52,042 nt of DNA from Macrostomum lignano (Eukaryota), in NCBI GenBank assembly GCA_002269645.1, contig NIVC01004276.1, forward strand, positions 1 to 52,042, given 5' to 3'. This document shows positions 6,230 through 49,399 of this stretch, in pieces (positions within the stretch are counted from its first letter, which is position 1; each line of letters opens with the position of its first letter). The translations under genes and the position numbers were made by a program. The notes under the pieces were generated by a model, which saw only the letters and a program-made list of their open reading frames with translations, searched no databases and was not told where the DNA came from.

Positions 6230-6504
6230 ATGGCGAGAAAGAGCGAGCGAAGCGAGCTCTTTCGAGCTTGCTTGCCGCAGCCAATCAAGCTGAAAGCACG
6301 CACACAAGATCACCGAAAACGATTAAGGCAGTTGGAAAGCCAATGGGCGCGGTAAGCGCTTTTATCCAGAGGAACTACCTGCTGGAACCAGCCATGCCGA
6401 ACGAAAATCAGACTACTCAAGTAGTGCAAAAGAGTGCAAGCAACTACCGAGAAATCTAATTTTCTAATTAGAAATTTTCTAATTTTCTAATTTTCTAATC
6501 TAAT

Positions 6505-6986
<482 letters not shown>

Positions 6987-16901: not shown

Positions 16902-19900
16902 TTATTTATCTTTGGCCGGCTCCTCACTCTCGGTCGAAGTCTCCTCAGCAGCAGCAGCGGCGGCTGCGGGGGCGGCCGGACGCGGCCAGGCGCGGGCGAA
17001 CAGCTGGCACCAGGCCAGCAGCCAGCAGGGCAGCAGCATCAGACAGTTCAGCCGGTAGGTGAAGCTGCCCAACAGCTGGCCTTCAACGTAGCCCTGCAGA
17101 GCGCCGTACTCGGCGCAGGTCCACGCCGACACTAAGCTTCTGGCTCCGCCGGCGGCATAGCAACCGCCTAGCAACAGGCCGATTGGCGAAGCAGCCGCCA
17201 AGGCGACGGCGCCGATGCCGAACCGAAGGACTGCCGGCAGTCTGTCGGGCCCGGCAGCCAGCAGGCAGACGGGTGCCAGGGGCAGGGCGGAGAGGAAGGC
17301 CAGGCCGAAGTTCACCAGCGACACCGCGCCAAGGCTGAGGCCCAGCGACAGGCAGGCAGCGAGGCGGAGCGCGCCAGGGTGGCAGGCGACGATCATGTTG
17401 GGGAACATCAGCGGAAAGGCGGCGGCCATCGCCTGCGGGAGGGCAGAGGTCAGCGGACTGAACTGCCTAATTGATCTACCGAACTGCCTAATTGATCTAC
17501 CGAACTGCCTAATTGATCTACCGAACTGCCTAATTGATGTACCGAACTGCCTAATTGATGTACCGAACTGCCTAATTAATGTACCGAACTGCCTAATTGA
17601 TGTACCGAACTGCCTAATTGATGTACCGAACTGCCTAATTGATGTACCGAACTGCCTAATTGGTAAACCAAACGGACTAATTGATGTACCGAACTGCCTA
17701 ATTAATGTACCGAACTGCCTAATTGATGTACCGAACTGCCTAATTGATGTACCGAACTGCCTAATTGATGTACCGAACTGCCTAATTGATCTATTGAACT
17801 GCCTAATTGATGTACCGAACTGCCTAATTAATGTACCGATTTGCCTAATTGATCTATTGAACTGCCTAATTGATTTACCGAACTGCCTAATTGGTACACC
17901 AAACGGACTAATTGATGTACCGAACTGCCTAATTGATCTACCGAACTGCCTAATTGGTACACCAAACGGACTAATTGATGTACCGAACTGCCTAATTGAT
18001 TTACCGAACTGCCTAATTGGTACACCAAACGGACTAATTGATGTACCGAACTGCCTAATTGATCTACCGAACTGCCTAATTGGTACACCAAACGGACTAA
18101 TTGATGTACCGAACTGCCTAATTGATCTACCGAACTGCCTAATTGATCTACCGAACTGCCTAATTGATCTACCGAACTGCCTAATTGGTACACCAAACGG
18201 ACTAATTGATGTACCGAACTGCCTAATTGATCTACCTAACTACCAGAAATATTACAGTGCAGTTATTTACCCTCAATAAGTACCCCACACCTTATAAATT
18301 CCCTGCAATTTAGAAACTCCTTAGATTATATAAATTCCCCACACCCCATAAATTGCCCACGCCCTATAGATTCCCGACATCCTATAAATTCCCCACATCC
18401 CATAAATTCCCCACATCCCAAAAATTCCCCACATACCATAAATTCCCCACATCCCAAAATTCCCCACATCCCATTAATTCCCCACATCCCATAAATTCCC
18501 CACATCCCATAAATTCCCCACATCCCATAAATTCCTCACATCCCATAAATAAATTCCCCACAGCCCATAAATTCCCCACACCCCACCTGCACAGCCAGCA
18601 GGCCGATCAGCATGCCGGCGCCCGGGTCGATGCGGAAGGCGGCGGCGGTCCTGATGAAGTAGGCCGGTGCCACCAACGCCAGCAGGCCGAAGCAGCCGGC
18701 CATGACGCACAGCCGGGCCACCGGGCCGACCACGCCGCCGCCGGCGCTTTTCGGCTTTGTCGACGCGTCGCCATCGCCGAAACCGACAACCAAAGAGTCG
18801 ATAGCGGCGAGGGCGAGGGCGAGCAGTACGACACCGAGTGGCGGGGTGTAGTCGCCGATGCTCACGTACCGATCGATCGCCGGCAGGGCGTAGAAGAAAA
18901 AGGACTGGTGGAACCGCTCCTGCAGGTTGTTCAACGAGCGCCAGATCGCCTCCACGACGGCGCCGGCCGTCCGGGTGGCCGAGGAGGAGGAGGAGGCGGC
19001 GCGACCTTCGCCGCTCAGCCCGACGGCGGGAATGTCGAACGGCAGGAACAGGCCGTGGAGGGAGGCGGGGCTGCCGCTGGCCTGTGGGGTGGCGGTTCAA
19101 AGAGTAGCGAACATGACTCACTGAATCTACTCATGACTCACTGAATCTACTCATGACTCACTGAATCTACTCATGACTCACTGAATCTACTAATGACTCA
19201 CTGAATCTACTTATGACTCACTTAATCTACTCATGACTCACTGAATCTACTCATGACTCACTGAATCTATCTATGACTCACTAAATCTAGCTATGACTCA
19301 CTGAATCTACCCATGTCTCACTGAATCTACCCATGACTCACTGAATCTACCCATGACTCACTGAATGTCTCACTGAATTTACCCATGACTCACTGAATCT
19401 ATCCATGACGCACTGAATGTCTCACTGAATTTACCCATGACTCACTGAATCTATCCATGACGCACTGAATCTATCTATGACTCACTAAATCTAGCTATGA
19501 CTCACTGAATCTACCCATGTCTCACTGAATCTACTCGTGACTCACTGAATTTACTCATGACTCACTGAATCTACTCATGACTCACTGAATCTACTTATGA
19601 CTCACTTAATCTACTCATGACTCACTTAATCTACTCATGACTCACTGAATCTATCTATGACTCACTAAATCTAGCTATGACTCACTGAATCTACCCATGT
19701 CTCACTGAATCTACCCATGACTCACTGAATGTCTCACTGAATTTACCCATGGCTCACTGAATCTATCCATGACGCACTGAATCTATCTATGACTCACTAA
19801 ATCTAGCTATGACTCACTGAATCTACCCATGTCTCACTGAATCTACCCATGACTCACTGAATCTACTCATGACTCACTGAATCTACTCATGACTCACTGA

Positions 19901-22900: not shown

Positions 22901-25900
22901 TGTTCCAAGTGGGGTCGAGAATCGAACCCGCGACCTTTCAGTCGTGAGTCCGATGCTCTGACCACTAGACTGCAACCTTCACAACACAAATTTAAATAAA
23001 GTAAACTGTCGGCTTTCGGCCCCTACAACAGACTCACGCCTGAAGAACTTCGCCAGCGCCAGCATCAGCGCCACGCTGCCGTCCGTCCGACGCTCGTGGG
23101 AGGCGGCGCCAGAATCGGCGGCGCGCAGAGGAGTCATGAGAACCAGCGCCTCGGTGCGCGCCGCGCGATAGGCTCGAGAAATGCCAACAGCATTGATGCC
23201 CTGCAGCTTCTGCGGATGTGTGAAGCGAAGAGGAAATGAAGATGTACCATAAATTTCAAATCAAGCTACAGACTGCTCATATCTGATAATATAGAAATTC
23301 ACCTTTTCTCCCAGAATGAGCGGATAGCTGAAGGTGAAGTTCTGAGTGTAGGCGTCCAGGCCAATTTTTTGCATTTCCTCTTCAAGCCACTTTTGGAATT
23401 TTCCACTAAAAATAAATATAAGGAAAATGTTAAAACAATAAGTAAACATAATTAAATAAAAAATCCAGATGGCATACCTCTCAAGGTTCTTCACAGTGTA
23501 CATCTTTTGCACATCAGCATAATAATCATTGATGAAGTTGACCTGATTAAATTGTTCCTCTACAACTCCTACAAATTGAATTGCAATAAGAATAACATCA
23601 TGGATAATATTAATTTAAAATACCATAAAATAAAATTTTCTTGTATAGAAACTAATCTTCATTGGCAAGCAAAGGGTCTCAAGCATATACAATAAAGGCA
23701 CAATACAAAATAACATGGTTTTGTGTATAATAATATGCAATAGTAAAAAATCATAAATGTTACAATATACTATGAGTTTTTCAGTTCTATTACAACTAGG
23801 ACTTGGCTGAATGTCCAAAATAAAAATTTAATTTAGAATGTTACAGACACCATGCTAGTTGTCATAGTAGCATATAACACAAAACTTTATATTTTGCATC
23901 TTTTAGAATTGCAGCAATATTTCTTATATAAAATGTATAAAATAGCAATTAAATTTAAATGACAATTTAGTTCATAGTTTTACTATTACCTTAATATATT
24001 TTGGCCCTATACTCTAGCCCCAGCCTATAATATAGCAGATGTTCTTAAACCCTCTATGCTATTCACATCTTTTACAGAATGCTTGATACTATTTATGAAA
24101 TTTAAACATTAAAAGAGGGCTAAATGCTACCAATTAGATTGTGAAACAGTATTAAAATTGCATTCCTTACTGTATGATTATTTAATTTTTGGTTAAAATT
24201 TTGGTTTAAGAATATGTTATTTGATATAAAAAAGAAAGATTTAACCAATGCTCTACTTAAACCAAAATTTTACCATATCCATATCAATGACTAATCAAGA
24301 ATTATTTTAGTTAGTATAAGAAAGTCTGTATCTGTCTCAATTGGTGAAATTGGCATTAGAAAAATGGTACAAAAATTAGTAAATTTACAAAAGCTACAAA
24401 TATTAACTTCACAACTGTTATAAACTTACAATTTTTTTTCATTATAACAAAGTTTCTTATATATTTTAGCTAATAATAGTGTTTTAACTTTTTTTTATTA
24501 CACTGTTTTGCTTTTTTCAGTCTAAAAACTTTTTAATGCTAATATTTTTTCATTTTGTGCACACTTATAAGGTATAGAAAGTTGTCTTAGGATGGCCTAG
24601 TAGGTCTTTAAATCCCACTGCTGCAACCAATAAGGTGTTTGCTGTTGTCTTCTTGATTTAGGCCTTAGTAGCATAGGTAGTGCTACCACTAGTTTCTTTA
24701 GGCCTTGGCCTTCAATGAGATGACTGCCATTCAAACAAAATAAACTTTAAAATACAACAAAATAAAATTTCAAAAAATCACATTAAAATATTTGTTAAAT
24801 TAATTAAACTAAATGAATTATAAATAAAAACATTCCTTTTATAATATTCTTATTTTCTTAACAAGTAATTAATGACTAATATTATATATAAAATACAAAT
24901 ATACAAATTAAAATGAAAAAAAAAATTATATACTTAATGTTAAGGTCATGCCTGTATTAAAATGACATGGTAGGCCTAGGCCTCATAGTGTTAGGCATAG
25001 AATAGAATAATAGGCCTAATCAATATGGGTGTATAATGATATACCATAATCAGGAAGGTGGCAGATATGCCAGAATTTTCTGGTATGCCAGATTTTTTGG
25101 CATGCTTAAAGCAATTATAAAAATATGGCATAATTGGTGTGCTCAAGGCAAAGCTAAAAATATGGCATGAATGATTGGCATGCATCAAAACTTTGAATTT
25201 TGAAGTTTAATATTGTAGTTATGGTTGTCATTGTGGTCATGTGGACATGGTTGTATTTATAGTCTAGTAAAAAGCTTAGTTAAAAATATTATTTTTTGTA
25301 AAATGTACTGAATGATTTTTGAAACTTTCTTTTCTTAGAATACATTAACATTAGCACAATTCACAAGATGAAAAGTGGCGATCAAGCTGATCATCTTGCA
25401 GTTGCAGTTGCAGCTTTACAATGTTGCATGGCATTCATTTGGCATGCTAAATGCTCCCTAGTATCACAAAGGTTCATTTAGTCTATTTGAGCACTTTATA
25501 ATTATAGGCCTAATATGCTAATAAAATGCTCAAGCTAAAGATAGCAGTATGGAGGTAGTCAGCAAAGTAGGGCTGAAAATGTAAGGCCTAGTATATTTGA
25601 CATATATAGTAAAAAGGGTCATTAAAATTTTGGCGTGCTTGGCGTGAATTGGTAGCTTTGCTCATCTTCGATTCCGGCGTGCCTCTGCCACCTTCCTGAG
25701 CATGGATGATATGCCATCATGCCATAAGTTTTTGATATTGCAATTGTGCCAGAAGTTATAATGATCTATACAAGAGCAAGAGATTAAGAAATAAGCTTGA
25801 TAGTAGTAGTCATTTATAAACATAAGTTGCCAAAAATCAAGTTAATAAAATACCTGGTGAAAGCGCCTTCTCTGAGATATAGCATCGATTATTAAACTGC

Positions 25901-26010
25901 GGATCGCTTAGCATCACCATATAGCCGATTGCACCAACAATCAGCAATATTCCTACGAACCGATGGTAGGACAGGAATACCTTGATTGTGGTTTCTATTT
26001 TACCTGTCAT
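16902..26010 (-). CDS. GPAA1: GPI transamidase subunit GPAA1/Gaa1, 633 aa
   Basis: Exons 26010-25854, 23568-23478, 23405-23303, 23209-23038, 21671-21319, 19081-18587, 17432-16902; all phases match (1902 nt). Motifs YISEKALSPGVVEEQF, RAYRAARTEALVL, HWAKDTIFL, EGVNGVLPNLDLVN, LNNLQERFHQSFFFY; multi-TM C-terminus. Confidence 0.93.
17459..18240 (+). repeat. Intronic 21-bp minisatellite (gaactgcctaattgatgtacc)
   Basis: Tandem units in GPAA1 intron 6, with an interspersed variant tggtacaccaaacggactaat. Confidence 0.97.
18280..18586 (+). repeat. Intronic 18-bp C-rich minisatellite (cccataaattccccacat)
   Basis: Tandem units ending exactly at the GPAA1 donor site (18586). Confidence 0.95.
19113..21133 (+). 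repeat. Intronic 20-bp minisatellite (atgactcactgaatctactc), about 2 kb
   Basis: Tandem units with recurring variant blocks in GPAA1 intron 5. Confidence 0.98.
21777..21892. repeat. Perfect 43-bp inverted repeat with 30-bp spacer (hairpin/MITE-like)
   Basis: cggccgtttctattggcaacacacacatgtaagtcgctattgg (21777-21819) and its exact reverse complement (21850-21892). Confidence 0.9.
21919..22540 (+). repeat. Intronic 21/22-bp minisatellite (gataccggtgatggactataa)
   Basis: Tandem units in GPAA1 intron 4, starting immediately after the inverted repeat. Confidence 0.96.
22690..22977 (-). mobile_element. tRNA-derived SINE copy (same family as 3376)
   Basis: gaatcgaacccgcgacctttcagtcgtgagtccgatgctctgaccactagactgcaacc is the reverse complement of the head; tail motifs conserved. 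Confidence 0.85.
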
Positions 26011-27279
26011 TTATCAATCAATTAAATATAGCTGTCAAAAGTCGAATTGAGCAATAAAAATTCGAGAATTGTAACTGTAAATTGTAAAATTCGTAATAGG
26101 TTTCTTATAAAACTTTGTTTTTAAAAAAACACATATCAAACAATAACAAAACTATGTACATTCACAAATATCATATAAACTTAACACTTATTTTTAATGC
26201 TCTATGACATAAAGTTATTGCTTTCAAAAAGCTTTTTTTAAGAAAAAACACTGCTATGTTTTCAAAGTAAGATTTCTGTTGCTACCGCGTCTTTAAATTT
26301 AACTGTAAGAAATATGGCAATATTTCCGGCAACACAACATTGTCCTGTTCAGCAAAGGCGTCATATGCAGCGATTCTTAATTTCGTTTCGATATTTTATA
26401 CTATTAGAAATGAAACAGATTTTTAAAAGACAAAAATGTTAAAAATACGTATACTAAATGGAATAGGAGTTTATTGCTATAGTAAGAAGGTTTTACAGGC
26501 ATACTAAACTAAACTTACCTCAGCTCACAAGAAAAACTCAGGCTATTTGATTCTATGACTTTGAAATTTAATTTTAATTTTTAACTTTTAAAATCTTTTG
26601 AGTTGCATTGCTATTAGAATTTAGCGTATTCGCTTTTAGTTTCAGTTTGACCAGACTTAGTTGCAGGGGTAGATTTGGTCATTAGGGTAGAGTAGAATAG
26701 TTGCAGCAAGACCTGTTCTTAGCTAGCATTTTCTATAAGTTTTTTCTGCACGAAAATGTTTTTAGAATTGTTATACTTTAAAAACTTGAACTTTAGTCTG
26801 TTTGTAATTCTTGCAAGTTATATTTGCAGCTTTTTTAGATTTAAAAAAATAATATTCTGTCAAATGTATAGAGTGGAAATATTTTAAATGCTTCGAATAA
26901 GCAACTGAAATGCTAAATTTTTTATACTAAAATTTTATATATTGGCTAATGCATAACGCTGTGTTATTGTTATTATGTGTAGAATAACACTAAGTTTTTT
27001 ACCATATATATTGCTATGCCATGCCATATTTCATTGAAGTACTTGTAACCAAAAGTTTTTGCCAAATTTAATTTGTGAAAGTATTTGAAGCAGTGGTATA
27101 ATTTTTTTGGGAACTGTTTATTTTCTATACAATAGCTTTTGGTCAGTAGTTTTCTCATAGACATTAGAATTTACTATTTTACAAATAGGTGAGGTAAATG
27201 TTATTTTTAAAGCATTAAATGGAAACTGCAAGGCCACACATTCTTTCGATTGAGCTCTTCGAAAAATAAAACGCCGCAG

Positions 27280-30200
27280 ATTTCCGAGATCGCAGTGAGC
27301 GACGCGGACCTTCTGCGCGAGATCTGCTCGTCGAATGGCCTGCCGGAGGACCGGGAAAAACTGCAGGCGGAGGCCGCCGAGACCGCCACCTTGGAGATTT
27401 TCTTCGGCGGCTATCCCCGTTTTGCTCACCTCAGCCTGTTCCCCAATCTCCGCGAGCTCATCATTGTGGAGCAGAGCCTGACCGAGATCAGCACCCTGGA
27501 CAGCTGCCCCCTGCTGGAGGTGCTCTGGGTCTCAGACTGCAGGCTGACTCAAATCTCTGGCCTGTCTGCAAATCACCGACTCAAGAAGCTGTACTTGCAT
27601 AGCAACTCCATAGCGACGATAAACGGCGGCCTCGACCATCTCGGCGGCTCGCTGGAGGTTCTGTGGCTGGCCAACAATCAGCTGCGCGAACTCGCTGGCT
27701 TCGAGAAACTGTCCAACCTGAAGGAGCTCAATTTGGCGCAGAACTTCATCACGGAAGTGGCCGGCTGCCTCACGGAGAACGCCAGCCTGGAGAGCTTGAA
27801 CCTGTCGGGCAACCCGCTGGCCTCCATTCGCGATGTTGTGTCGCTGGCGGCTCTGCCGTCTTTGCGCCGGTTCTGCCTTCGCGACCCGCAGTACCGACCC
27901 TGCCCAGTCACCCAGCTATCCAACTACTCCATCTTCATCCTGTACCACATGCCCCGGCTGCTCAACCTGGACACGTTCGACTGCTCAAGCCGGCTGCCGT
28001 TTGAGCTGGCGGACAGCACAGTATTGAAGAAACGAATGTACTACGCCATGCGAGCCGAGGTTCTTGAGCGGACCAGCGCTTGTCTCGGCCGGAGGGTGAC
28101 AATTGGCCTGGCCGAGTACCACAAGGTGGGTTGAGGATGTGGTATCAAGGAAGTGGGATCAAGGATGTGGGATCAGAGATCTGGGATCAAGGATGTGGGA
28201 TCAAGGATCTGGGACCAATGATCTGGGATCAAGGATGTGGGATCAAGGATGTGGGATCAGGGATCTGGAATCAAGGATCGGATCACAAACCTGGGATCAA
28301 GGATGTGGGATCAAGGATGTGGGATCAAGGATGTGGCATCAAGGATGTGTGATCAAGGATCTGTGATAAAAAATCTGGGATCAAGGATCTGGGATCACAA
28401 ATCTAGGATCAAGGATCTGTGATAAAAAATCTGGGATCAAGGATCTGGGATCACAAATCTAGGATCAAGGATCTGGGATCACAAATCTGGGATCAAGAAT
28501 CTGGGATCTAATGATCTGGGATCAAGATCTGGGATCAAGGATCTGGGATCAAGGATCTGGGATCTAAGATCTGGGATCTAGGATCTGGGATCTAGGATGT
28601 GGGATCAAGGATCTGTGATAAAAAATCTGGGATCACAAATATGGGATCAATGATCTGGGATCACAAATCTGGGATCAAGGATCTGGGATCACAAATCTGG
28701 GATCAAGGATCTGGGATCTAGAATCTGGGACCAATGATCTGGGATCAAGGATCTGGGATCAAGGATCTGGGATCAAGGATCTGGGATCAAGGATCTGGGA
28801 TCAAGGATCTGGGATCAAGGATCTGGGATCAAGGATCTGGGATCAAGGATCTGGGATCAAGGATCTGGGATCAAGGATCTGGGATCAAGGATCTGGGATC
28901 AAGGATCTGGGATCAAGGATCTGGGATCAAGGATCTGGGATCAAGGATCTGGGATCAAGGATCTGGGATCAAGGATCTGGGATCAAATCTGGGATCAAGG
29001 ATCTGGGATCAAGGATCTGGGATCAAGGATCTGGGATCAAGGATCTGGGATCAAGGATCTGGGATCAAGGATCTGGGATCAAGGATCTGGGATCAAGGAT
29101 CTGGGATCAAGGATCTGGGATCAAGGATCTGGGATCAAGGATCTGGGATCAAGGATCTGGGATCAAGGATCTGGGATCAAGGATCTGGGATCAAGGATCT
29201 GGGATCAAGGATCTGGGATCAAGGATCTGGGATCAAGGATCTGGGATCAAGGATCTGGGATCAAGGATCTGGGATCAAGGATCTGGGATCAAGGATCTGG
29301 GATCAAGGATCTGGGATCAAGGATCTGGGATCAAGGATCTGGGATCAAGGATCTGGGATCAAGGATCTGGGATCAAGGATCTGGGATCTAGAATCTGGGA
29401 CCAATGATCTGGGATCAAGGATCTGGGATCAAGGATCTGGGATCAAGGATCTGGGATCAAGGATCTGGGATCAAGGATCTGGGATCACAAATCTGGGATC
29501 AAGGATCTGGGATCAAGGATCTGGGATCAAGGATCTGGGATCAAGGATCTGGGATCAAGGATCTGGGATCAAGGATCTGGGATCAAGGATCTGGGATCAA
29601 GGATCTGGGATCAAGGATCTGGGATCTAAGATCTGTGATCTAGGATCTGGGATCTGGGATCTAGGATCTGGGATTTAGGATCTGGGATCAAGGATCTGGG
29701 ACCAAGGATCTGGGACCAAGGATCTGGGACCAAGGATCTGGGACCAAGGATCTGGGACCAAGGATCTGGGACCAAGGATCTGAGATACCTAAATTTAACC
29801 GACCATTTCTTCAACAGGCTCGCCTCGTCGAAACTGGAGCAGGAAACTTCAGCCAGCTGGAGGCCGCCTGGCCAACAACGCGTGGCTTCTTCACCGAGGC
29901 ATTGAAGAAGATCGAAATGGACAGAGAGCTGGCCTGGAACCTGCTCAACATGGAGTTGGAGAGCGGCGGCAGCGTTCGCTGCGAGCTGGGCACCGGGCAA
30001 GACTGGCACAAACTGGTGGCCGACATTGTCAGCTCGAGGTTCTGCTCGTCACAGCATCGGCAGAGCGGCGTCACCGCCTGCAAGGTGGACAAAGTGCACC
30101 GATTGCACCTGCCAGTGCTGGCGGCCAGGTGAGACAGTCAGTCAGTGAGTGAGACAGTCAGTCAGTCAGTCAGTCAGTCAGTGAGACAGTCAGTCAGTCA

Positions 30201-33200
30201 GTCAGTCAGTCAGTTAGTCAGTCAGTCAGTCCTTATCAACCACACCGCCATCCAGGTACCAGGAGGCGTGTCTGCCGCGTCTGCAAACCCTTGCCCGGAG
30301 CACCTACTGCTCTCTGGACATGGTGGCAAAGAAGTACCAGGACTATCTGTTCTACCGTTGGCCCGAAGGCGACAACGACAGTCTGCTGGACTGCCTAGAG
30401 CGCGGCGTCACCAGCCGGCCGGCGGTGCTGTCCAACAGCGTCAACATCGCCGATGGGGCAACGCTTTGCGACTGCGCAAAGGAAACTGGCGTCGGCCGGT
30501 CGCGGCTGCTGCTGGTGAAGGCCTACATCGGCAAGTCGGTGCAGGCGGTCGCATCACTGGAGGAGGTCGAGACGATCATTGCGGCTGCAAACGGAGGCGA
30601 GCAACAGTCGCAGGAGTCAGGCGATGAAGAGCCGAAGCGGAAACTGACCGCCGTGTTCCACATGGCCGACTCCACCAGCGAAGGCTACTCGTGCGAATGC
30701 CTCGGCCGCCAGTGCACCTGGTACTTTCTAGACAACGCCTGCCTTGTTCCGGAGTTCCTGGTGGAGCTGGAGTACTCGGGCAGGCGGACCAGCAATCCGT
30801 TTCACCAGGTCGTGTGCGGCGGTGGCCCGGCTGCGCCCACGCCTGACCTCGAGCCCGCGCCGCCAGTGACGGCACCCTACGAGAACCTGGCCGAGCTGCA
30901 GATCGAGGCCCTCGGCCTCACCCGGCTCCGAGGCCTCGACTCGCTGCACTCTCTGCGGACGCTGAACGCCCGTTCAAATCTGCTGACAGGCCTGGAGGAC
31001 CTGGCCGGACTGCCAGTTGAAGAGATCGACGTGTCCTGGAACCGAATCGTCTCCATCGACGGTCTCAAGCACGTCGGGAAGCTCAGAAGTCTCCGGCTGG
31101 CGTTTAATCGACTCACCTGCCTGAGAAACGAGCTCAGCCACATGCGGAAGCACACGGCAATGCTGACTGGCCTCAGTCTGGAGGGAAATCCCTGGCATCG
31201 GTACAAGGTGGCTTACAGAGTCATCGTCATCAATAAGCTGAAGGAGCTGAAGGTTTGTTTACATGGAGTTCTATGCGTCATCAGACTTAAATTTCAGGCA
31301 TAAAAACATTTATAAAAGGGGACTTGGGTCCACGCAAAAATCTCAGTCAACCCCGTGCCTTAGTGTTTGCTCGAATGCAATTTGAATATTTTATCTTAGT
31401 CATGGTCTCAGCACAGATAGTAAAGAAGACCAGATATGCCTATTATGCAAATTTGCGTTGCCTTGCTCATATCCTAACACAATATTCTCATTTCACAAAT
31501 TGTGCAGGTACTGGATGGCCAGCCGGTCACAGAGGAGGAAGTCACAGCCTCAATGCCAGGCCGGTTCAACCTTCTCAGCTACGCTGCTCACGTGACCGGC
31601 ACGCCCAAATACATCAGTTTGGAGTCGCCGACCCAATTCTTGCCAGTGCAGCCGCCTGAGCTGTTCGCCCAGGTGAGCATGCTCAACCTGGACGGACTCA
31701 ACCTGACTCGAATAACCGGTCTGGAGCGCTGCTTCAACCTGCGCTGGCTGTCAATCAACTACAATCACGTGTCCCGCATTGAAGGCCTTGACTCCTGCTC
31801 GCAGCTGGAGGAACTGCTGGCAACGCACAATCTGATTGGCACAATGCCTACAGGCACATATCCGGCCCTGCGCCACCTGAACTTGGCGCATAACTGCATC
31901 GAACAGATTGGCACGGGGCTGCTGGCGCCAAACCTGACCAGCCTCAACCTGTTGAACAACCACGTGTCCAGCCTGGCCGGCATTGACAAGCACAGCAGCC
32001 TGGCCCAGCTCTTCATCGGCCTGAACCGCATCCAGGACACTCGCGAGCTCTTCTACCTCAAATCTTTGCAGTCGCTCCTGATTCTCGATCTCGGCGAGAA
32101 CCCCATCGCGTCCAACTCGCACAACTATCGGACGACTGTCATCTACCACCTGCGATCGCTGTGCTCACTCGACGGCGTCCCAGTTGAGCAGGACGAGGTT
32201 CAGAGCGCCGTTCAACTGCTGGGCGGCAAGCTGACGACTGACCTGCTGATTGAAAAGTTCGGTCACGACCGATTCTACGATCTCAAAGAGCTGGACATGT
32301 CGCGCAGCAACCTGCGGACTATTGAGCTCAACCTCCACGATCGCTTCATCAACCTGCGCAGCGTCAATCTCGAGTCCAACTCGTTGACGACGCTCAACGG
32401 AATCGCCAGCTTGCCGTCTCTTCGCGTTCTCTGCCTGAACCACAACCACATCGAGTCTCTGGCCTCGGGCACTGGCAGCCTTCTGCCCACGCTGGAGGTG
32501 CTGCACCTCGCCTACAATGGGATCAAGGACGCCGCGTCGTTACAGCTGCACCGGCTGCCGTCGCTGCGCACTCTGTTTATGCAGGGCAACGAGCTGCAAA
32601 CGACGGACGGATTGCAGTCAGGTCAACTGCGGGAGCTCGTGCTGGATCGGAACAAGCTGAGAACAATTAACCTGAGCGGGTGTCCCTACGTGCAGGTGAG
32701 AGCAGACTGTGCGCACCGATCTTGACCGATTATTCTCGCCACTACTGCTGATATTCTTTGAAGTTACATGTGTAGAGTTAAAAACGTATTGAAGTTGTCA
32801 GTGACAGAGCAGCTCAGACGAAACTTATCCGTCTAAAGTACCTGGGTTCAATTCCGTGAGCAGTGAAATTACGGTTTATGTGCATTGCCTGACAATGAGA
32901 AATTAAGGACCGATGTTCACCCTGGATTAGGCATAACCGCTTGTGTTCCTGCTGATTACCGATGGAGAACTTTTATGGCTCTCCACACGTAACTCAATTT
33001 GGTCGCATTGTAATTTGGAGTGCAACCTTTCATGAAGCCTTAAAATCGGATTTCTTGCTCGTAAATTTGACCTGTCGTAGCGATGAGGTTAGGACGTAGT
33101 CAACCCTGTGAGAGTTGGTTACAAAATTATTTGCCAAGGATAACTTCAATCAAAATACTACCAAACAGTGCAACTTTACTTCTATCAGGAGTTGCACGTC

Positions 33201-33770
33201 GAGGAGAACCGACTGAAAGACCTTGGCGGCATACCGGACCACTGCCCCTACCTGCACACTCTGTACATCAGCGCCAACAAGCTTGCCGAACTCGCAGAAC
33301 TGGACCGGCTGCACAGCCTCACCCGGCTGCAGAGCCTCACCCTGCTTGGCAACCCGCTGGCCAGACGGCTGCTCCACCGGCCCATCTGCGTGCACCGGCT
33401 GCGGCACCTGCACAGCCTGGACGGCATTCCTGTGACGCCGGAGGAGCGCGACAAAGCCGATATGTACTTTGCCGACCTGCAGCAGATGCAGCAAATGCAG
33501 GCGCAGCCGTCGATGTCAGCCGCTCTGATGTCCGATCATCAGCAGCAGCAGCAGATGATGCAACAACAGCAGCAACAGCAGCAGCAGCAGCAGGGCAGAC
33601 CTTTGCGACTCACCAACGTCAACATCGGCGGCATGCCGGAGCCGTACACGCTGAACCAGCTGGTGTCGCAGCGTCAGTCTGGCGGCGGCGGCAGCGGCTA
33701 CAAGGGCGGCAGCAGCGGTGGCATCGCGCAGACTCCACAGGCGCAGCTGCCGATGTTTCGAAAAAAATGA
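27280..33770 (+). CDS. LRRC9: Leucine-rich repeat protein 9, about 1308 codons; start codon not found in the genome
   Basis: Exons 27280-28125, 29818-30128, 30256-31252, 31508-32695, 33189-33770 (phases 0,2,0,0). Motifs LLREICSSNGL, LEIFFGGYPR, LRDPQYRPCPV..LSNYSIFILYHMP, KKRMYYAMR, MELESGGSVRCELG; many SDS22-type LRRs. Confidence 0.92.
28134..29781 (+). repeat. Intronic 14-bp minisatellite (ggatctgggatcaa), about 1.65 kb
   Basis: Homogeneous core 28740-29620 with degenerate edges; fills LRRC9 intron 1. Confidence 0.98.
30131..30229 (+). repeat. (CAGT)n microsatellite in LRRC9 intron 2
   Basis: Direct reading. Confidence 0.9.
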
Positions 33771-34374: not shown

Positions 34375-34995
34375 CACTCTGTGTCTGAGGCACTCTTCAC
34401 TTTGTCTCTGCGTCACTCTCCTCTCTGTCTGTGTCAGTCTCCTCTCTGTCTGTGTCAGTCTCCTCTCTGTGTCACTCTCCTCTCTGTGTCACTCTCCTCT
34501 CTGTGTCACTCTCCTCTCTGTGTCACTCTTCTCTCTGTGTCACTCTCCTCTCTGTCTGTGTCACTCTCCTCTCTGTCTGTGTCACTCTCCTCTCTGTCTG
34601 TGTCACTCTCCTCTCTGTGTCTGTGTCACTCTTCTCTTTGTCTCTGTGTCACTCTCCTCTCTGTGTCTGTGTCACTCTCCTCTCTGTGTCTGTGTCACTA
34701 TCCTCTCTGTGTCTGTCTCACTCTCCTCTCTGTCACTGTGTCACTCTCTATTTGCCTGTGTCACTCTCGTCTTTGATTTTGTTTCACTCTCCTCTTTGCT
34801 TCTGTGTCACTCTCCTCTCTGTGTCACTCTCCTCTCTGTGTCACTCTCCTCTGTGTGTCACTCTCCTCTGTGTGTCACTCTCCTCTGTGTGTCACTCTCC
34901 TCTGTGTGTCACTCTCCTCTCTGTTTCACTCTTCTCTCTGTGTCACTCTCCTCTGTGTCACTCTCCTCTCTATCTGAGTCACTCTCTACTATGTC
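34375..34995 (+). repeat. Intergenic TC-rich minisatellite (tgtgtcactctcctctc, 17-23 bp)
   Basis: Tandem units of variable length. Confidence 0.95.
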
Positions 34996-35496
34996 ACTCT
35001 ACCATCAGGAGTCCAAGATTACATGGCAGACACATTAAAATTGACCAGATCAGCAGTCAACTTTATCTCAGCTTTATTTTATCCCACTGTCCGTCCAGTT
35101 ATGAATTGCCTAAAAATTTGCTTCTGAAGCAGAAAACACGAAACTCGAGTCGGCCTTTTACCCTGGCGCTTATTTTCGAGCTCTGCCCTACCTATTCCTT
35201 GCTATTTTTATAAATAATATTATCAACTTTGCCTGTAGCTTAAAAGTACATCACAGAGGAACTTTTTCAGACCATTGTCTCACTCACCTGTGCACACGCT
35301 GCTTGTTGATAAAAAACACAATAAAGCATAAAAAAATTATTGTTAAGATGTGTATTCTTTCAAACAATATTTTTTGGCCTTGATCATTTGGTAGATAGAG
35401 AAAGTTTACACTGAATAAACTTTACAAAACAATCTTAAACAAAATAATGCATGTCAACGGTGGCGGCGCACCGAACCCCATCAGACCCGGGTCGCA

Positions 35497-38400: not shown

Positions 38401-41400
38401 CGCTGCTGGCAACGAGGACGAGTTGGAACGGCGTCGACGGACGCTGGAGGAGCTCGGGCCGATCGAGTACCCGATGCTGCTCAACGACATCGAGGCTGGA
38501 CAGCTGCCCATGCTGGTCTACTGGACTCGATGGCCTGTGCCGCGAGTTGCCGAAAGGGACAATAGTGAGTTGCTATGGATTTGTTTATGGCGTTGCTATG
38601 GACTTGCTGTCAGAAAATTATGGTTATACTGTTGATATGGCGTTGCTATGGGATAAGCTTTTTGTGTACGTTACCACAACGTTGCTATGGCGTTTTAAAA
38701 TTTCAGGTGTTTACTTAATGAAAGTTTTTAAGTTCAATATTTTCGTTAAAGAAAATAGTTAGGTCAAAATGCGTGCATCGGTATGCTCCAAAGTTTCTAT
38801 ACAACTTAGTTATAATGATAGAGCTAGTTTTGTAATCATTCTCATATTTGCTGTTGACTTATTCAGTTTGTGAGGTGACATTGGGACTGATTTATTGCAT
38901 GAACTGCCTGCCCGATTTAATTTCAGCTCCATTTAGACAGGCACTGGCACCGTCTATGGTAATTTCCTATGATTTCATCCAGTTTTGAGCACAACGCAAC
39001 CCCTTCACCGCGTTCCGTCACTTCACTCTAAGTTGATTAAAAGAAAAAGTCAACTGTAGAGAAGTGGAAGTCACACCCCATTGTTACTCTGTGTTATTCA
39101 TTGTCACCAGCCTGTCGATTTGAATTTTTGATACTTAACCATTTACCAATGCAAGATTCCCGTTTGTTTTTGCTACTTGCCCAGCCATCGGAGCTTTTGT
39201 GCACTTTGGGTGCCTGCTTGACGCCCGTTTGACCAAATTTAATTTCCATTGTTCAAGTACGAGCAAGTACATTGAAGTACATCATGTCTTGCTCAAGGAC
39301 ACAAATTGTTCCGAGTGGGTCAAGAATCGAACCCCCGACCTTTCAGTCGGTGAGTCCGACGCTCTGAACCACTAGGCTGCAACCCCCCATTAAGCTACAA
39401 TTCCCCTCTGAAGTACATGACGTCCTTTTAATAGCGAGGTACTTGGAACTACTAACTAGAAATGCATAATGTTTACTCTGCTGCATTATAAATATAATTT
39501 TACTAATCTGTACTAATCAGGTGTAAGTTTATGCAGAGCAAATAAATTGGGAATAGACACGTTAGTGCTGTACATCAACACCGCCACCCACCATCATCGT
39601 CATCTGCGCGTCACCTGCAGACACCGCCTCGGTGTTCGAGCTGGTCGAGGAGCTGACTGGCATCGACCTGACGAAGGTCACCAAGGAGGAGCTGACCAGG
39701 GAGAAGATCGACGCGTGCATGTCGCCGAGGCCGATGACGCCGCAGCCTGTGAGACGGTTTTCATAAGAGGGAATCGCAGTATAGGCTAGACTTACTAACA
39801 CTACTCATACTTGACTAATTATCCTACTTATCAGTAGTGAGCAGTGAAAACTGCAACCATTTTAGCTGCATTTAGAGCTAGAATTGTTGGTTAATTCTAA
39901 AAATCAGTGCACGCGAGTTTAAACAAATTCATTAAATTTTTAAATTATTTGCTATTTCCAGGAAAACGTTCCGAGAGAGGAATTCGACAAGTTGAACGAG
40001 GAATTTTCTGAGAAGTTCGCTCAACTTGAGAGAGATTACGTGTAAGATTAAGCGGCTATTTTGTTTGTCAGACTACCTGGATTGAGTGGTTGGGATTTTA
40101 CGGCTCCTAGTGTAGGGGTAAAACCAAACCACGCTCTAAAGGTTGTGGGTTCGAATCCCCGGCACGGCCTCGTTAATTTGAGATTCTGAAAGTCCCCAAG
40201 TGAAAGAGCCACCAAGTGACGAGAAATCAAACCCTTGTCACTTAATCTTAGTTCCAGAGTCAGGTGATCTCGCATTTTTGCAGGGAAAAGCTGAAAGCGC
40301 TCGAGGCTCAGCTGAGCAGCAGCGAGGCGCCGGCGACAGCGACGCAACAGCAGGCCGCCGCCGCGGACACGCAGGAGCGAGCGACCAGCGCCCAGCGCTC
40401 CCTGCCGGGTTCGCGGCGGTCGTCTGGGAGGAGAGCGACGCCGCAGCTGGCGCAGCAGCAGCAGGCGGCTGAAGAGACTGCGGTGAGCTTGAAGATTAAA
40501 AAATTTCTATATTATTCTAGAAGTGCATGTACATGTAATGAAAACAAGGCACAGAGAGTGGACATGCCTGACGACATGCCTGACGACATGCCTGATGACA
40601 TGCCTGACGACATGCCTGACGACATGCCTGACGACAAGCCTGACGACATGCCTGACGACATGCCTGACGACATGCCTGACGACATGCCTGACGACATGCC
40701 TAACGAGATGCCTGACGACATGCCTAACGACATGCCTGACGACATGCCTGACGTTTGTGTGTGCTCAGGGGTTACTATTATTATTGTTGATTTTCACTAA
40801 CTCGATATTTGCACTTGCAGCAACAGCAGCAGCAGCCGCCAAAGAAGCCGGGCATCCGCGTGCCTCCCCGACCGCAGCGCCCAAAGAAGAACTTCATGGT
40901 GGGCCGGCCGCTGCCAGCCTGGGGCGAGGACCTGCCAGAAGATTTCTTCGAGCGCATGGAGCTGCTCAACCACCTGACTCGCGAGCACAAGGCCCGCCTC
41001 GTTGCTCAGATTCGAGCCGAGATTGCTCGAGAAGTTGAGGCTCAGCTGATGGAGCTGTCGCGACTGGCCGCTGGCTACGATGATGATGAAGATGAGCAGG
41101 GAGAGGTCGGGGAGGCTGGAGAGGACAGGCGGCAGCTGAGCTCAGCTGACGAGGTCACCATTCCTGCGCTGTTCATGCCGCAGCGGGGCGAGCGCAAGGT
41201 GTACAACCCCAGGGCGCACCTGTACTTCCAGCCGCACGGCATCAAAGGTGCTCGGCTCACTCAGCCGCCCTCTATGCTGAGCCTGCCGCCGCTGCCTGCT
41301 GTGAGTCTGATGGAGGATGGGGCCGCGGCACTGCCGAGGTTTCTCACTGGAAATAAAGGGCTTCCAATCCTGCCATAAGCCTTCCGAATCTTATCCCAAA

Positions 41401-42744
41401 CAATCTGATCCCAAATCGACAATCTGATCCCAGATCGACAATCTGATCCCAAATCGACAATCTGATCCCAAATCGACAATCTGATCCCAAATCGACAATC
41501 TGATCCCAAATCGACAATCTGATCCCAAATCGACAATCTGATCCCAGATCGACAATCTGATCCCAGATCGACAATCTGATCCCAGATCGACAATCTGATC
41601 CCAGATCGACAATCTGATCCCAAATCGAAAATCTGATCCCAGATCGACAATCTGATCCCAAATCGAAAATCTGATCCCAGATCGACAATCTGATCCCAAA
41701 TCGACAATCTGATCCCAAATCGACAATCTGATCCCAAATCGACAATCTGATCCCAAATCGACAATCTGATCCCAAATCGACAATCTGATCCCAGATCGAC
41801 AATCTGATCCCAAATCGAAAATCTGATCCCAGATCGACAATCTGATCCCAAATCGACAATCTGATCCCAGATCGACTATCTGATCCCAAATCGACAATCT
41901 GATCCCAAATCGAAAATCTGATCCCAGATCGACAATCTGATCCCAGATCGACAATCTGATCCCAAATCGACAATCTGATCCCAAATCGACAATCTGATCC
42001 CAGATCGACAATCTGATCCCAAATCGATATCTGATCCCAAATCGACAATCTGATCCCAAATCGACAATCTGATCCCAAATTGACAATCTGATCCCAAATC
42101 GACAATCTGATCCTAAATCGACAATCTGATCCCAAATCGACAATCTGATCCCAAATTGACAATCTGATCCCAGATCGACAATCTGATCCCAAATCGACAA
42201 TCTGATCCCAGATCGACTATCTGATCCCAAATCGACAATCTGATCCCAAATCGAAAATCTGATCCCAGATCGACAATCTGATCCCAGATCGACAATCTGA
42301 TCCCAGATCGACAATCTGATCCCAAATCGAAAATCTGATCCCAGATCGACAATCTGATCCTAGATCGACAATCTGATCCCAGATCGACTATCTGATCCCA
42401 AATCGACAATCTGATCCCAAATCGACAATCTGATCCCAAATCGACAATCTGATCCCAAATCGACTATCTGATCGCAAAGCGAGAATCTCATCTAAAGAAT
42501 ACTATTTAAAGTCAAATATGAACTACAAGTAGATGGGAATATTTGTTATTGCACTGTACATGTGAATGTTTGCAGCAGCCCCCTTACACTTCCGCTTGCA
42601 ATTTCTCATACAATTTTCCAGCGAACTTCAGTCCTGAATTTGTTCGATGTGAGCAGTCGACCAGCAGCTCAGAGCGTCACCGCCCCGCCTCCCAACGTCA
42701 GCATTCAGACTCAGCTGAGCATGCTCAAGAAAACTGTCAATTAA
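35497..42744 (+). CDS. Uncharacterised multi-exon coiled-coil protein with a probable C2-like domain
   Basis: Exons 35497-35550, 35640-35753 (next junction unresolved), 36038-36113, 36662-37232, 37661-37906, 38168-38564, 39621-39748, 39962-40041, 40284-40482, 40821-41300, 42622-42744. Phases are consistent from 36038 onward, with strong GC3 codon bias. C2-like strands LHVRVYPAKQVKAKQVSVEVEF and LRINVQNERMDRVGSVVLSLRQL. Confidence 0.75.
36211..36624. mobile_element. About 386-bp insertion flanked by a 14-bp direct repeat (putative TSD)
   Basis: taacttcttaccta at 36211-36224 and 36611-36624; the insert starts ggggggt and ends accccctaaaag. Confidence 0.55.
37233..37400 (+). repeat. Intronic gttgctatgg-type repeat
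   Basis: Repeated gttgctatgg/gttgctacg units directly after a donor site. Confidence 0.85.
37929..38110 (+). repeat. Intronic 22-bp repeat (gttgctatggagttgtttatga)
   Basis: Tandem units; same core as 37233 and 38568-38690. Confidence 0.85.
39283..39388 (-). mobile_element. 3'-truncated SINE copy (head plus start of body)
   Basis: gaatcgaacccccgacctttcagtcggtgagtccgacgctctgaaccactaggctgcaacccc; flanked by tgaagtacat direct repeats (39273, 39409). Confidence 0.8.
40105..40200 (+). mobile_element. tRNA-like/SINE head with perfect B-box
   Basis: GGTTCGAATCC near 40148; no complete cloverleaf recognised; intronic. Confidence 0.35.
40560..40752 (+). repeat. Intronic 12-bp repeat (tgacgacatgcc)
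   Basis: Direct reading. Confidence 0.95.
41390..42475 (+). repeat. Intronic 19-bp minisatellite (gacaatctgatcccaaatc / ...cccagatc)
   Basis: Tandem units in the last intron of the 35497-42744 gene. Confidence 0.97.
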
Positions 42745-43729
42745 ATGCAGAGAGAAATCATTCTGTACTATTAATAAAAATAATTGACCACCCGAACCAA
42801 TTTTCTGTATTTTGGCCCCTCTGTATGAATGAATTTAACTTAAAATTGCCTCAGATGATTTACATGTACAATCGAATTAACAAATTTGTTAATTTAGATT
42901 TTGATTTTCAACAGTGCATCATAATGTACTTTATATAAGCACAAATTGTTGTTGTGCCTTAAAATAAAAAAAAACACGTCGAAAAGCTTTCCTTTTACTT
43001 TAAACATGTGTCTAACTTCACGTGTTTTAAATTATTTATTTTATCGTGATATTTTCAGACGATATTTTTCCACATGCTTTGCTTGCTTTTGTATTTTTTA
43101 CAGATTTTCAAATCAGTGGATATTTCATTCATTCCGGCCTTAGCTTTGAACTTCTGCCATTCTTGTAGCAAACTATTTGTTAATTCTTTGAAAAATCTGT
43201 TTCTTAGAAGCGTTTGCCGTTTAGCTTGTAGATTAACAAATCAGGATTAGATAAGCAATCGATCAAGGCTTAATGAACAAGTCCGAATTGGATCGATAAA
43301 GCAGAGTTAAATAAGAATAATATCAATTGTCAAACGAATACACATGAATTCAAAAAACTAATAAATATTTGAATTTAGACAACCAAAATACGAACCACTA
43401 CGAAACAAATTAAATCAACCAGTTATGAAAGAAGAAATGTTGAAAAAAATAAGCTAAACATAAATAAAAACGAACAAATGTCTAATTCAAATAAACTAAA
43501 ATCAAAGTTACAGAAGCAATTCAAAACATTAAAATAAAATCTGGATTATAGAAAATCACATAAAAGTTTGATTATCAAATCAAAAGCCAAGATTAAGTAA
43601 AAATTACTATTAGATAAACAAACCAGATCAGAATAACGTAAATATGTAAATTACAATAAAATATAAGAATAAATTAGTAATTAAATTTCATTGCAATTTT
43701 TTCAGCTCTGGGTCGCAATTATCGGGCGC

Positions 43730-44866
43730 ATGGAATCCGAAATTGCAGACCTACAAAACCCGGAAGTGCCGCAGTGCCTCTACTGGTCAGCCGAGCAGGT
43801 GGCGGACTGGGTGTCCAGCCTCGGACTCGGCCAGTACCGGGACTGCTTCCTCACCAACGGCATCAACGGGCGCCGTCTGGTTCTGGTTGACGCGTCAAAT
43901 TTGCCTAAAATCGGGGTGCACGAGTTTCAGCACGTGCAGGCGTTGAGCGGAGCTGTGCGCGACCTGCTGAAGATCGAGAGCCCTAGATGGGATCGGTGGG
44001 TCACGGCTCTGCTCTTTTGCCTTCGAATTTGTACTTTTGGCACAAAAATGTTTTACTTTTAATAATAACTGTCGCGTCAAAATACATTGAAGCATCTGGA
44101 TTTGCGCCAATTCAAATGTCAAGAATTGGCGCCAAATTGAGTGTCCTAGGATTTGCGCCAAATTAGGAGTCAGAGCGTTGGCGCCAGATTTAGTCTCTCA
44201 GCGTTGGCGCTAAATTTAGTGTCAGGATTGGCGCCAAATTTAGTGTCAGGATTGGCGCCAAATTTAGTGTCAGGATTGGCGTCAAATTTAGTGTCAGGAT
44301 TGGCGCCAAATTTAGTGTCAGGATTGGCGCCAAATTTAGTGTCAGGATTGGCGTCAAATTTAGTGTCAGGATTGGCGCCAAATTTAGTGTCAGAATTAGC
44401 GCCAAATTTAGTGTCAGGATTGGCGCCAAATTTAGTGTCAGGGCGCCAAATTTAGTGTCAGGATTGGCGTCAAATTTAGTGTCAGGATTGGCGCCAAATT
44501 TAGTGTCAGGATTGGCGCCAAATTTAGTGTCAGGATTAGAGAAAGTAATTGTCAGGATTGGCGCTAAATTAAATGTCATGATTGGCGCCCACTTCAGTGT
44601 CAGTATCGACGCCAAATTCCGTGTCAGGGTATCAGGTAAAGCGTCAGTTGCAGCCATTGATAAGACTATATTCTAAACCCATTTCCAGCCGCATCTACCT
44701 GCCGCCCCGCGACAACCTCGGCATGTACCTGGAGATGAAAAGCAAAACCGGGAAGTCTCTAGACGAGCTGACCTACGATAAATTCAATGCGAAATTCTCC
44801 GACGCGAAGTGGAGACCCCCCGTGGCGAACATGTGCCTCCTGCTGCCGCCCAGCTCTGACGAGTGA
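43730..44866 (+). CDS. SAMD15: SAMD15-like SAM-domain protein, 147 aa
   Basis: Exons 43730-43995 and 44689-44866 (phase 2). SAM domain WSAEQVADWVSSLGLGQYRDCFLTNGINGRRLVLVDASNLPKIGV; tail RIYLPPRDNLGMYLEMKSKTG resembles the SAMD15 C-terminus. Confidence 0.8.
44085..44640 (+). repeat. Intronic 21-bp minisatellite (ggcgccaaatttagtgtcaggatt-like)
   Basis: Fills the SAMD15-like intron. Confidence 0.95.
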
Positions 44867-49275: not shown

Positions 49276-49399
49276 TCTGGCAGCAGGTTTTGCTAACCTG
49301 GCTGTTTTTAGCGACAGCTTTAATTTTGCACCTGCATGTGCAACAAACTGGTCTAATTACTGCCATCTTCCACCTGCAAGTCGCATTAAATTTAGCAGT

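What the first reader, a model, noticed from the sequence alone, without database searches (positions are those of the whole stretch)
27240..27350. LRRC9 lacks a genomic start codon: Met may come from the spliced-leader AUG
Seen: the frame has no ATG until about residue 235 (the ORF track starts at TTG). An AG at 27278-27279 precedes ATT TCC GAG in phase 0, and I found no ATG|GT mini-exon in the 1.2 kb shared with divergent GPAA1. Established: flatworm spliced leaders end in AUG, which can act as initiator. Adding that Met gives MISEIAVSDADLLREICSSNGL, colinear without gaps with the vertebrate start as I recall it ([22 protein letters not shown]). Inference: this conserved ciliary gene depends on trans-splicing for translation.
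Basis: partly seen in the sequence, partly recalled or inferred. Interest (0 to 1): 0.75.

Follow-up and report, generated by a model that had tools for sequence, protein, structure and literature searches.

The report
Flatworm LRRC9 gene without start codon
The Macrostomum lignano LRRC9 gene has no ATG of its own in front of its conserved first exon, and most likely borrows the AUG at the end of the trans-spliced leader RNA, which is a mechanism already known in flatworms and could not be shown directly here.

Summary
The LRRC9 frame is open from the stop at 27208. It has no in-frame ATG until 27949, which is codon 224 counted from 27280. An AG at 27278-79 precedes ATT TCC GAG in phase 0.

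The window is the whole Macrostomum lignano contig NIVC01004276.1. GenBank annotates this gene (PAA47969.1, Mlig005232.g2) as 5'-partial, with the CDS starting at 27283. Three other assembled copies are identical across this stretch, so the missing ATG is not an assembly error.

Exon 1 is clearly translated. It runs 282 open codons with GC3 0.81 and matches LRRC9 orthologues at E = 1e-70 or better. With one added Met, its N-terminus has the usual orthologue length.

The single M. lignano spliced leader ends in ATG. Use of that AUG as initiator has been published for flatworms (Cheng 2006), and Macrostomum annotators already note it.

I could reach no SL-junction reads. The acceptor looks weak. 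A second copy's annotated 5' end sits at an AG 16 nt downstream, where the SL AUG would be followed by UGA. At best this is a new example of a known mechanism, of modest interest.

The parts
26011..27279 (+). AT-rich region shared with divergent GPAA1. Presumed promoter plus outron of LRRC9.
   Evidence: GC 0.28. It has 20 plus-strand ATGs, none in a usable ATG|GT mini-exon. No exon is annotated here in GenBank.
27208..27210 (+). In-frame stop codon (TAA) that closes the LRRC9 frame upstream.
27278..27279 (+). Candidate trans-splice acceptor AG (cgccgcag|ATT). The SL AUG would be in frame, giving M-ISEIAVSDADLL.
   Evidence: The annotated CDS of PAA47969.1 starts at 27283.
27287..27288 (+). 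Second AG in phase 0 (tttccgag|ATC). The SL AUG would give M-IAVSDADLL.
27294..27295 (+). AG out of phase (gatcgcag|TGA). The SL AUG would be followed by UGA. It coincides with the annotated 5' end of the identical copy g3.
27280..28125 (+). LRRC9 exon 1: 282 codons, the conserved N-terminal LRR block, no ATG before codon 224.
27949..27951 (+). First in-frame genomic ATG. The WormBase-derived models A0A1I8IZN9 and A0A1I8FZM7 use it as their start, which drops 223 conserved residues.
29818..30128 (+). LRRC9 exon 2.
   Evidence: Spliced mapping of P0168 onto the window.
30256..31252 (+). LRRC9 exon 3.
31508..32695 (+). LRRC9 exon 4.
33189..33770 (+). LRRC9 exon 5, including the stop codon.
25837..26010 (-). 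First coding exon of the divergent GPAA1 (Gaa1) gene, with its own ATG at 26010.

Best explanation
The LRRC9 pre-mRNA of Macrostomum lignano is transcribed from the 1.27 kb region it shares with GPAA1. Its AT-rich outron is removed by spliced-leader trans-splicing at the AG at 27278-79, or possibly at the in-phase AG at 27287-88. The 35-nt SL ends in AUG, so the mature mRNA reads ...UUGCAUG|AUUUCCGAG. The SL AUG becomes the only AUG upstream of the conserved N-terminus and is in frame with it, giving M-ISEIAVSDADLLREICSSNGL.

Shown here: the missing genomic ATG, the phase of the AG, the species, the sequence of its SL, and that exon 1 codes for conserved protein.

Inferred: that this AG is used for trans-splicing, and that the ribosome starts on the SL AUG.
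For: 1. There is no in-frame ATG between the stop at 27208 and codon 224, yet exon 1 is 282 open codons with GC3 0.81. It matches LRRC9 orthologues from residue 7-15 onwards at E = 1e-60 to 1e-78. Translation must therefore start upstream of about 27300.
2. The window is M. lignano contig NIVC01004276.1. Its single SL ends in ATG, and about 30% of its genes are trans-spliced, with conserved genes enriched (PMC8629364).
3. The GenBank annotation was built from RNA-seq plus SL-read peaks (TBONE pipeline, PMC5730564). It has no upstream exon in any of the four copies, and it labels g2 and g3 'partial'. The g2 CDS starts at 27283, 3 nt after the AG.
4. Four assembled copies are identical over 27208-27355.
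5. With the SL Met, the Asn of the conserved C..NG motif sits at residue 20. Compact full-length orthologues have it at about 14-36, so only a Met is missing.
6. The mechanism is established: more than 40 S. mansoni cDNAs need the SL AUG (Cheng 2006, cited in PMC9851317). Macrostomum genome authors call the SL's terminal ATG a translation start codon (PMC10468722).
7. On the same contig, the SAM-domain gene's 5'-partial CDS begins exactly after ttttttcag at 43706. This shows that trans-splice-defined 5' ends occur in this annotation.
Against: 1. No SL-junction read, cDNA or peptide was available.
2. The g2 mRNA end implied by the CDS (27281-27283) is not directly preceded by AG. The SAM gene control, in contrast, is exact.
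3. The identical copy g3 is annotated from 27296-27298, and 27296 follows AG 27294-95. There the SL AUG would read AUG-UGA, out of frame.
4. The acceptor is cgccgcag. It does not fit the commonest motif [T/C]TNCAG. Its -25..-4 pyrimidine fraction is 0.45, against 0.59-0.68 for the gene's cis acceptors.
5. Only 2 of the 7 AGs between 27209 and 27300 are in phase, which is what chance gives.
Confidence: 0.6

Rival explanations
1. A short cis-spliced 5' exon with its own ATG, missed by the annotation, lies upstream and splices into one of the AGs at 27213-27300.
For: Enumeration finds in-frame combinations with consensus GT[AG]AG donors. ATG 26256 with donor 26267 (GTAAGA) fits acceptors 27213, 27255 or 27300. 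ATG 26436 with donor 26482 (GTAAGA) fits 27233 or 27296, and 27296 is the g3 5' end. An ATG|GTAGGA also lies at 25963.
Against: There are 268 frame-compatible combinations in 3.3 kb, so a few with good donors are expected by chance. All are AT-rich and encode non-conserved peptides. None with a consensus donor joins 27280. The RNA-seq-based annotation shows no such exon in four copies and declares the CDS partial. Orthologue N-termini need no extra residues.
Confidence: 0.1
2. Translation starts at a non-AUG codon. Candidates are the AUU at 27280 (one base from ATG), the UUG at 27250, or the in-frame CUG at 27313. The mRNA could be capped conventionally or trans-spliced out of frame at 27296.
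For: ATT at 27280-82 is a near-cognate codon at exactly the point where coding composition begins. The g3 annotated 5' end is compatible with the 27296 acceptor, which would leave no usable AUG.
Against: The annotated mRNAs begin downstream of both 27250 and 27280. Near-cognate initiation is usually inefficient. An in-frame AUG supplied by the SL is a simpler, documented route in this phylum.
Confidence: 0.1
3. The start codon has been lost. The locus now yields only an N-terminally truncated protein from Met 224 (27949), or it is on its way to becoming a pseudogene in this neopolyploid genome.
For: M. lignano carries several redundant copies. WormBase-derived models start at MPRLLNLD. Copy g1 has a frameshift at the A-run at 27356.
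Against: The 223 codons before that Met are open, GC3-rich, and conserved with orthologues from animals to protists. All four copies keep them. The g1 frameshift is a homopolymer indel, typical of long-read assembly error.
Confidence: 0.07
4. Both AGs (27278-79 and 27294-95) are used for trans-splicing. One product is productive (AUG-AUU...). The other carries a one-codon uORF (AUG-UGA) and is not translated into LRRC9.
For: Two different annotated 5' ends sit on identical sequence: g2 at 27281-83 and g3 at 27296-98. The latter is exactly compatible with an AG.
Against: A 5' end falls next to an AG by chance about 3 times in 16. The g2 end is not exactly at an AG. There are no read counts.
Confidence: 0.1

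Closest known systems
SL-AUG-initiated mRNAs of flatworms (Cheng, Cohen, Ndegwa & Davis 2006, J Biol Chem 281:733, as cited in PMC9851317 and PMC12582326)
   Same: The SL exon ends in AUG. The recipient ORF has no genomic AUG of its own before conserved sequence. The junction puts the SL AUG in frame.
   Different: That work was in Schistosoma mansoni, with cDNA and translation assays. Here the species is the free-living Macrostomum lignano, and the junction is inferred rather than observed.
Macrostomum SL trans-splicing as annotated (Wudarski 2017 PMC5730564; Ustyantsev & Berezikov 2021 PMC8629364; Wiberg et al. 2023 PMC10468722)
   Same: Same organism and same SL. The 2023 paper explicitly treats the terminal ATG as a translation start codon that matters for annotation.
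   Different: None of the texts I could read names LRRC9 (Mlig005232), and none counts genes that strictly need the SL AUG.
LRRC9 orthologues in trematodes (Calicophoron daubneyi CAL8086500.1, Paragonimus westermani KAA3674875.1)
   Same: Same protein family, with the same N-terminal ...EIC..NG... start a few residues after the Met.
   Different: Both are single-exon genes with a genomic ATG. The lack of an ATG is therefore not shared across the phylum.

Membership tests
SL-AUG-initiated flatworm mRNA | The organism's spliced leader exon ends in AUG. | tested here: met
   Species identified as M. lignano. SL sequence ...TTATTGCATG taken from PMC8629364 and PMC5173321.
SL-AUG-initiated flatworm mRNA | The mRNA is trans-spliced to the SL at a defined AG acceptor. 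| tested here: inconclusive
   The annotated mRNA ends are 27281-83 (g2) and 27296-98 (g3), next to AGs, and there is no upstream exon. No SL-junction reads were reachable.
SL-AUG-initiated flatworm mRNA | The SL AUG is in frame with the conserved ORF at the junction. | tested here: met
   In phase for acceptors 27280 and 27289. Not in phase for 27296, which gives AUG-UGA.
SL-AUG-initiated flatworm mRNA | No genomic in-frame AUG lies between the upstream stop and the conserved N-terminus. | tested here: met
   Stop at 27208, first ATG at 27949, identical in four copies.
SL-AUG-initiated flatworm mRNA | The protein starts with the SL-encoded Met. | not testable with these tools
   This needs N-terminal proteomics or ribosome profiling.
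LRRC9 (leucine-rich repeat-containing protein 9) | Full-length similarity to named LRRC9 proteins, with N-terminal, central and C-terminal LRR blocks. | tested here: met
   Pfam LRR_4, LRR_8 and LRR_9 match exons 1, 3, 4 and 5. Best relatives are named LRRC9 in Octopus, Priapulus, Pycnogonum, trematodes and fish. UniRef names the M. lignano proteins LRRC9.
LRRC9 (leucine-rich repeat-containing protein 9) | Ciliary or axonemal role. | not tested
   No LRRC9 chain matched among solved structures; the nearest hits are other LRR proteins such as LRRC23 and dynein light chain 1. The literature gives only ciliome and sperm listings.

The most novel reading that the evidence does not exclude
Identical gene copies carry two annotated 5' ends, next to the AG at 27278-79 and the AG at 27294-95. 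If both AGs are real trans-splice sites, acceptor choice would act as a translational switch. One junction gives AUG-AUU..., the only route to full-length LRRC9. The other gives AUG-UGA, a one-codon uORF with no usable start. In that case a conserved ciliary gene would be fully dependent on trans-splicing and regulated by it, and this dependence would have arisen within the Macrostomum lineage, since trematode LRRC9 keeps a genomic ATG.
Probability: 0.1. Interest if true: 0.55.

Novelty: new member of a known kind. Interest (0 to 1): 0.3.

Why it matters
If confirmed, LRRC9 would be a clean example, in a free-living and transgenesis-ready flatworm, of a conserved gene that cannot be translated without the spliced leader. 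Genes like this would help explain why trans-splicing persists once it has evolved.

There is also a practical consequence for annotation:
- The public models of this gene are either '5' partial' or start at internal Mets (27949, or within exon 3), which loses up to several hundred conserved residues.
- Gene finders for flatworms need to allow an SL-supplied start codon.

The mechanism itself has been known since 2006, so the conceptual gain is small.

Tried and rejected
- Word-indexed protein search with exon 1. It returned only a scallop LRRC9-like protein and generic LRR proteins. No M. lignano entry came back, although such entries exist. The species came only from the exhaustive representative search plus cluster look-up.
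- Exact look-up of the single-exon GPCR ORF: not on record.
- Rfam scan of the window and a search for the SL 3' half in the window: nothing. No SL RNA gene lies here.
- Searches for Mlig005232 or LRRC9 in M. lignano papers and held supplements: nothing.
- Wasik 2015 by my guessed PMC id: not held.
- Scan of metagenome contigs for the SL 3' end followed within 0-16 nt by exon sequence: no match.
- PDB sequence search: no LRRC9 structure.
- A uniform +1 coordinate offset in the annotation, which would have put both annotated 5' ends exactly at AGs. I rejected it because the SAM gene's CDS starts exactly at its acceptor.

Full report
WHAT IS THERE

The plus-strand frame containing 27280 is closed upstream by TAA at 27208-27210. 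It has no ATG until 27949-27951, which is codon 224 counted from 27280. The mechanical ORF list starts at TTG 27250 only because it accepts TTG as a start.

An AG sits at 27278-27279, and 27280 begins ATT TCC GAG in phase 0. Composition changes sharply here. GC is 0.28 over 26011-27279 and 0.60 in exon 1, where GC3 is 0.81.

The minus-strand neighbour starts at ATG 26010 and is GPAA1 (Pfam Gaa1). Among the 20 plus-strand ATGs in the 1.27 kb between the two genes, none is followed directly by GT.

WHOSE GENE IT IS

The word-indexed protein search gave only a scallop LRRC9-like hit at 42% identity. The exhaustive representative search found a near-identical protein, P0016. The cluster look-up then named six Macrostomum lignano entries.

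One of them, PAA47969.1 (BOX15_Mlig005232g2, 'partial', 1306 aa), lies on a contig of exactly 52042 bp. The window is that contig, NIVC01004276.1, in the same orientation.

Mapping that protein back onto the window gives five exons: 27283-28125, 29818-30128, 30256-31252, 31508-32695 and 33189-33767. All introns are GT...CAG|G. The best relatives are named LRRC9 in octopus, priapulid, sea spider, fish, gecko and two trematodes.

HOW THE PUBLIC ANNOTATIONS HANDLE THE START

No annotator found a start codon for the conserved N-terminus:
- g2 (this window) is 5'-partial and begins SEIAVSDADLL, at 27283.
- g3 is partial and begins SDADLL, at the equivalent of 27298.
- g1 and g4 start at internal Mets in exon 3.
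- The two WormBase-derived models start at MPRLLNLD, which is the ATG at 27949.

The GenBank annotation came from StringTie/TACO transcripts. These were cut at peaks of SL-trimmed reads by the TBONE pipeline, and ORFs were then called with TransDecoder (PMC5730564). A 5'-partial CDS therefore means that the annotated mRNA itself begins at that CDS start or within the two bases before it. So no upstream exon was seen in RNA-seq.

NOT AN ASSEMBLY ERROR, AND NOT A DEAD GENE

I fetched the three other copies (L001, L002, L003). They are about 99% identical to the window, and base-for-base identical over 27208-27355.

L002 has a one-base deletion in the A-run at 27356, which explains its truncated model.

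Exon 1 is 282 open codons. It aligns with orthologues from residue 7-15 onwards at E = 1e-60 to 1e-78, so it is translated.

With one extra Met, the Asn of the conserved C..NG[ILV] motif is residue 20. In compact full-length orthologues it is at roughly 14-36. Examples are fish MTDEEIVKELCSINGI, gecko [25 protein letters not shown] and Calicophoron MELSQRVILGEICSQNGV. Only an initiator is missing, not a domain.

THE PROPOSED MECHANISM

M. lignano has a single 35-nt SL, CGGTCTCTTACTGCGAAGACTCAATTTATTGCATG. About 30% of its genes are trans-spliced, with conserved genes enriched. The commonest acceptor motif is [T/C]TNCAG, found at 44% of sites (PMC8629364).

Joining the SL to 27280 gives ...GCAUG|AUUUCC, which reads M-I-S-E-I-A-V.

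That the flatworm SL AUG can act as initiator is established. It is in frame in 28% of S. mansoni trans-spliced mRNAs and is required by more than 40 cDNAs (Cheng et al. 2006, as summarised in PMC9851317; see also PMC12582326). [quoted passage not shown]

WHAT WEAKENS THE SPECIFIC CLAIM

1. I could reach no SL-junction read, cDNA or peptide.
2. The g2 mRNA end implied by its CDS is 27281-27283, which is not directly after an AG. On the same contig, the SAM-domain gene's 5'-partial CDS begins exactly after ttttttcag at 43706. A uniform coordinate offset therefore cannot explain the discrepancy.
3. The identical copy g3 is annotated from 27296-27298. Position 27296 follows AG 27294-95, and an SL joined there would read AUG-UGA, out of the LRRC9 frame.
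4. The acceptor cgccgcag| does not fit [T/C]TNCAG. Its pyrimidine fraction over -25..-4 is 0.45, against 0.59-0.68 for the gene's four cis acceptors.
5. Of the seven AGs between 27209 and 27300, two are in phase (giving exon starts at 27280 and 27289). That is what chance gives.

RIVALS

Upstream cis exon. Enumerating every ATG...GT exon that could splice in frame into any of those AGs gives 268 combinations over 3.3 kb. In the intergenic region, only two ATG-donor pairs have a consensus GT[AG]AG donor. One is ATG 26256 with donor 26267, which fits acceptors 27213, 27255 or 27300. The other is ATG 26436 with donor 26482, which fits acceptors 27233 or 27296. None with a consensus donor joins 27280. 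All are AT-rich and unsupported by annotation, so I give this about 0.1.

Non-AUG initiation at ATT 27280, TTG 27250 or CTG 27313: about 0.1.

A truncated product from Met 224, or decay of the gene, fits poorly with the conserved open exon 1: about 0.07.

Dual acceptor use is possible but untested: about 0.1.

COMPARISON AND NOVELTY

It would work like the SL-AUG-initiated mRNAs of Schistosoma. On membership, the SL-AUG feature, the in-frame junction and the missing genomic AUG are met. Trans-splicing at this site is inconclusive. The N-terminal Met is untestable here.

The two trematode LRRC9 genes I fetched are single-exon and have genomic ATGs. The dependence, if real, arose in the Macrostomum lineage rather than being ancestral to flatworms.

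This is at most a new member of a known kind. Its practical value is for annotation, since all six public models of this gene are partial or truncated.

VERDICT

Interest is 0.3.

Noticed in passing
window 43697-43735: The annotated 5'-partial CDS of the SAM-domain gene begins at 43706, exactly after a consensus acceptor (ttttttcag|CTC). The SL AUG would be in frame and would add 8 residues (LWVAIIGR, after the Met) ahead of the first genomic ATG at 43730. This is a second candidate for SL-AUG initiation on the same contig.
   Followed up: partly
window 35440-35460 (same in L003 14767-14787): The 853-aa gene is also annotated 5'-partial, starting at 35455. Just upstream is genomic aataatGCATGt, which matches 8 of the last 10 bases of the SL (TTATTGCATG), and there is no AG nearby. 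It could be a false SL-read call in the annotation pipeline or chance similarity. The real start is probably the ATG 14 codons downstream.
   Followed up: partly
window 27296-27298; L001 5997-6003: Copy g3 (PAA46348.1) is annotated from SDADLL. That is compatible with an mRNA starting at the base after AG 27294-95, where the SL would read AUG-UGA. This may be an alternative, unproductive trans-splice site.
   Followed up: partly
L002 (NIVC01001544.1), equivalent of window 27356: A one-base deletion in an A5 run inside exon 1 shifts the frame and explains why g1 (PAA66653.1) starts at an internal Met. It looks like a homopolymer assembly error. The other differences between the four copies in the intergenic region are mostly homopolymer indels too.
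   Followed up: partly
window 28134-29786: LRRC9 intron 1 is almost entirely a 14-bp minisatellite (AGGATCTGGGATCA, about 119 copies, 90% matches). Similar arrays show up as repetitive ORFs at about 6500-7000, 17400-18200, 34380-35040, 41260-42440, 44150-44660, 47530-48250 and 49200-50160.
   Followed up: partly
L005 1501-5961 (Calicophoron daubneyi); L006 1501-6042 (Paragonimus westermani): LRRC9 is a single uninterrupted exon of about 1490-1510 codons in both trematodes, against five exons in M. lignano. Each has a genomic ATG a few bases downstream of possible acceptors (ctgcag, ttttag in Calicophoron). Intron loss or a retrogene origin was not examined.
   Followed up: no
window 27949; UniRef A0A1I8IZN9 and A0A1I8FZM7: The WormBase-derived LRRC9 models start at the first genomic ATG and drop 223 conserved N-terminal residues. 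This is a systematic risk for flatworm genes whose start codon is supplied by the SL.
   Followed up: no
The word-indexed homology search did not return any of the six M. lignano LRRC9 entries that are in the collection. The absence of close hits from that tool should not be read as absence from the database.
   Followed up: no
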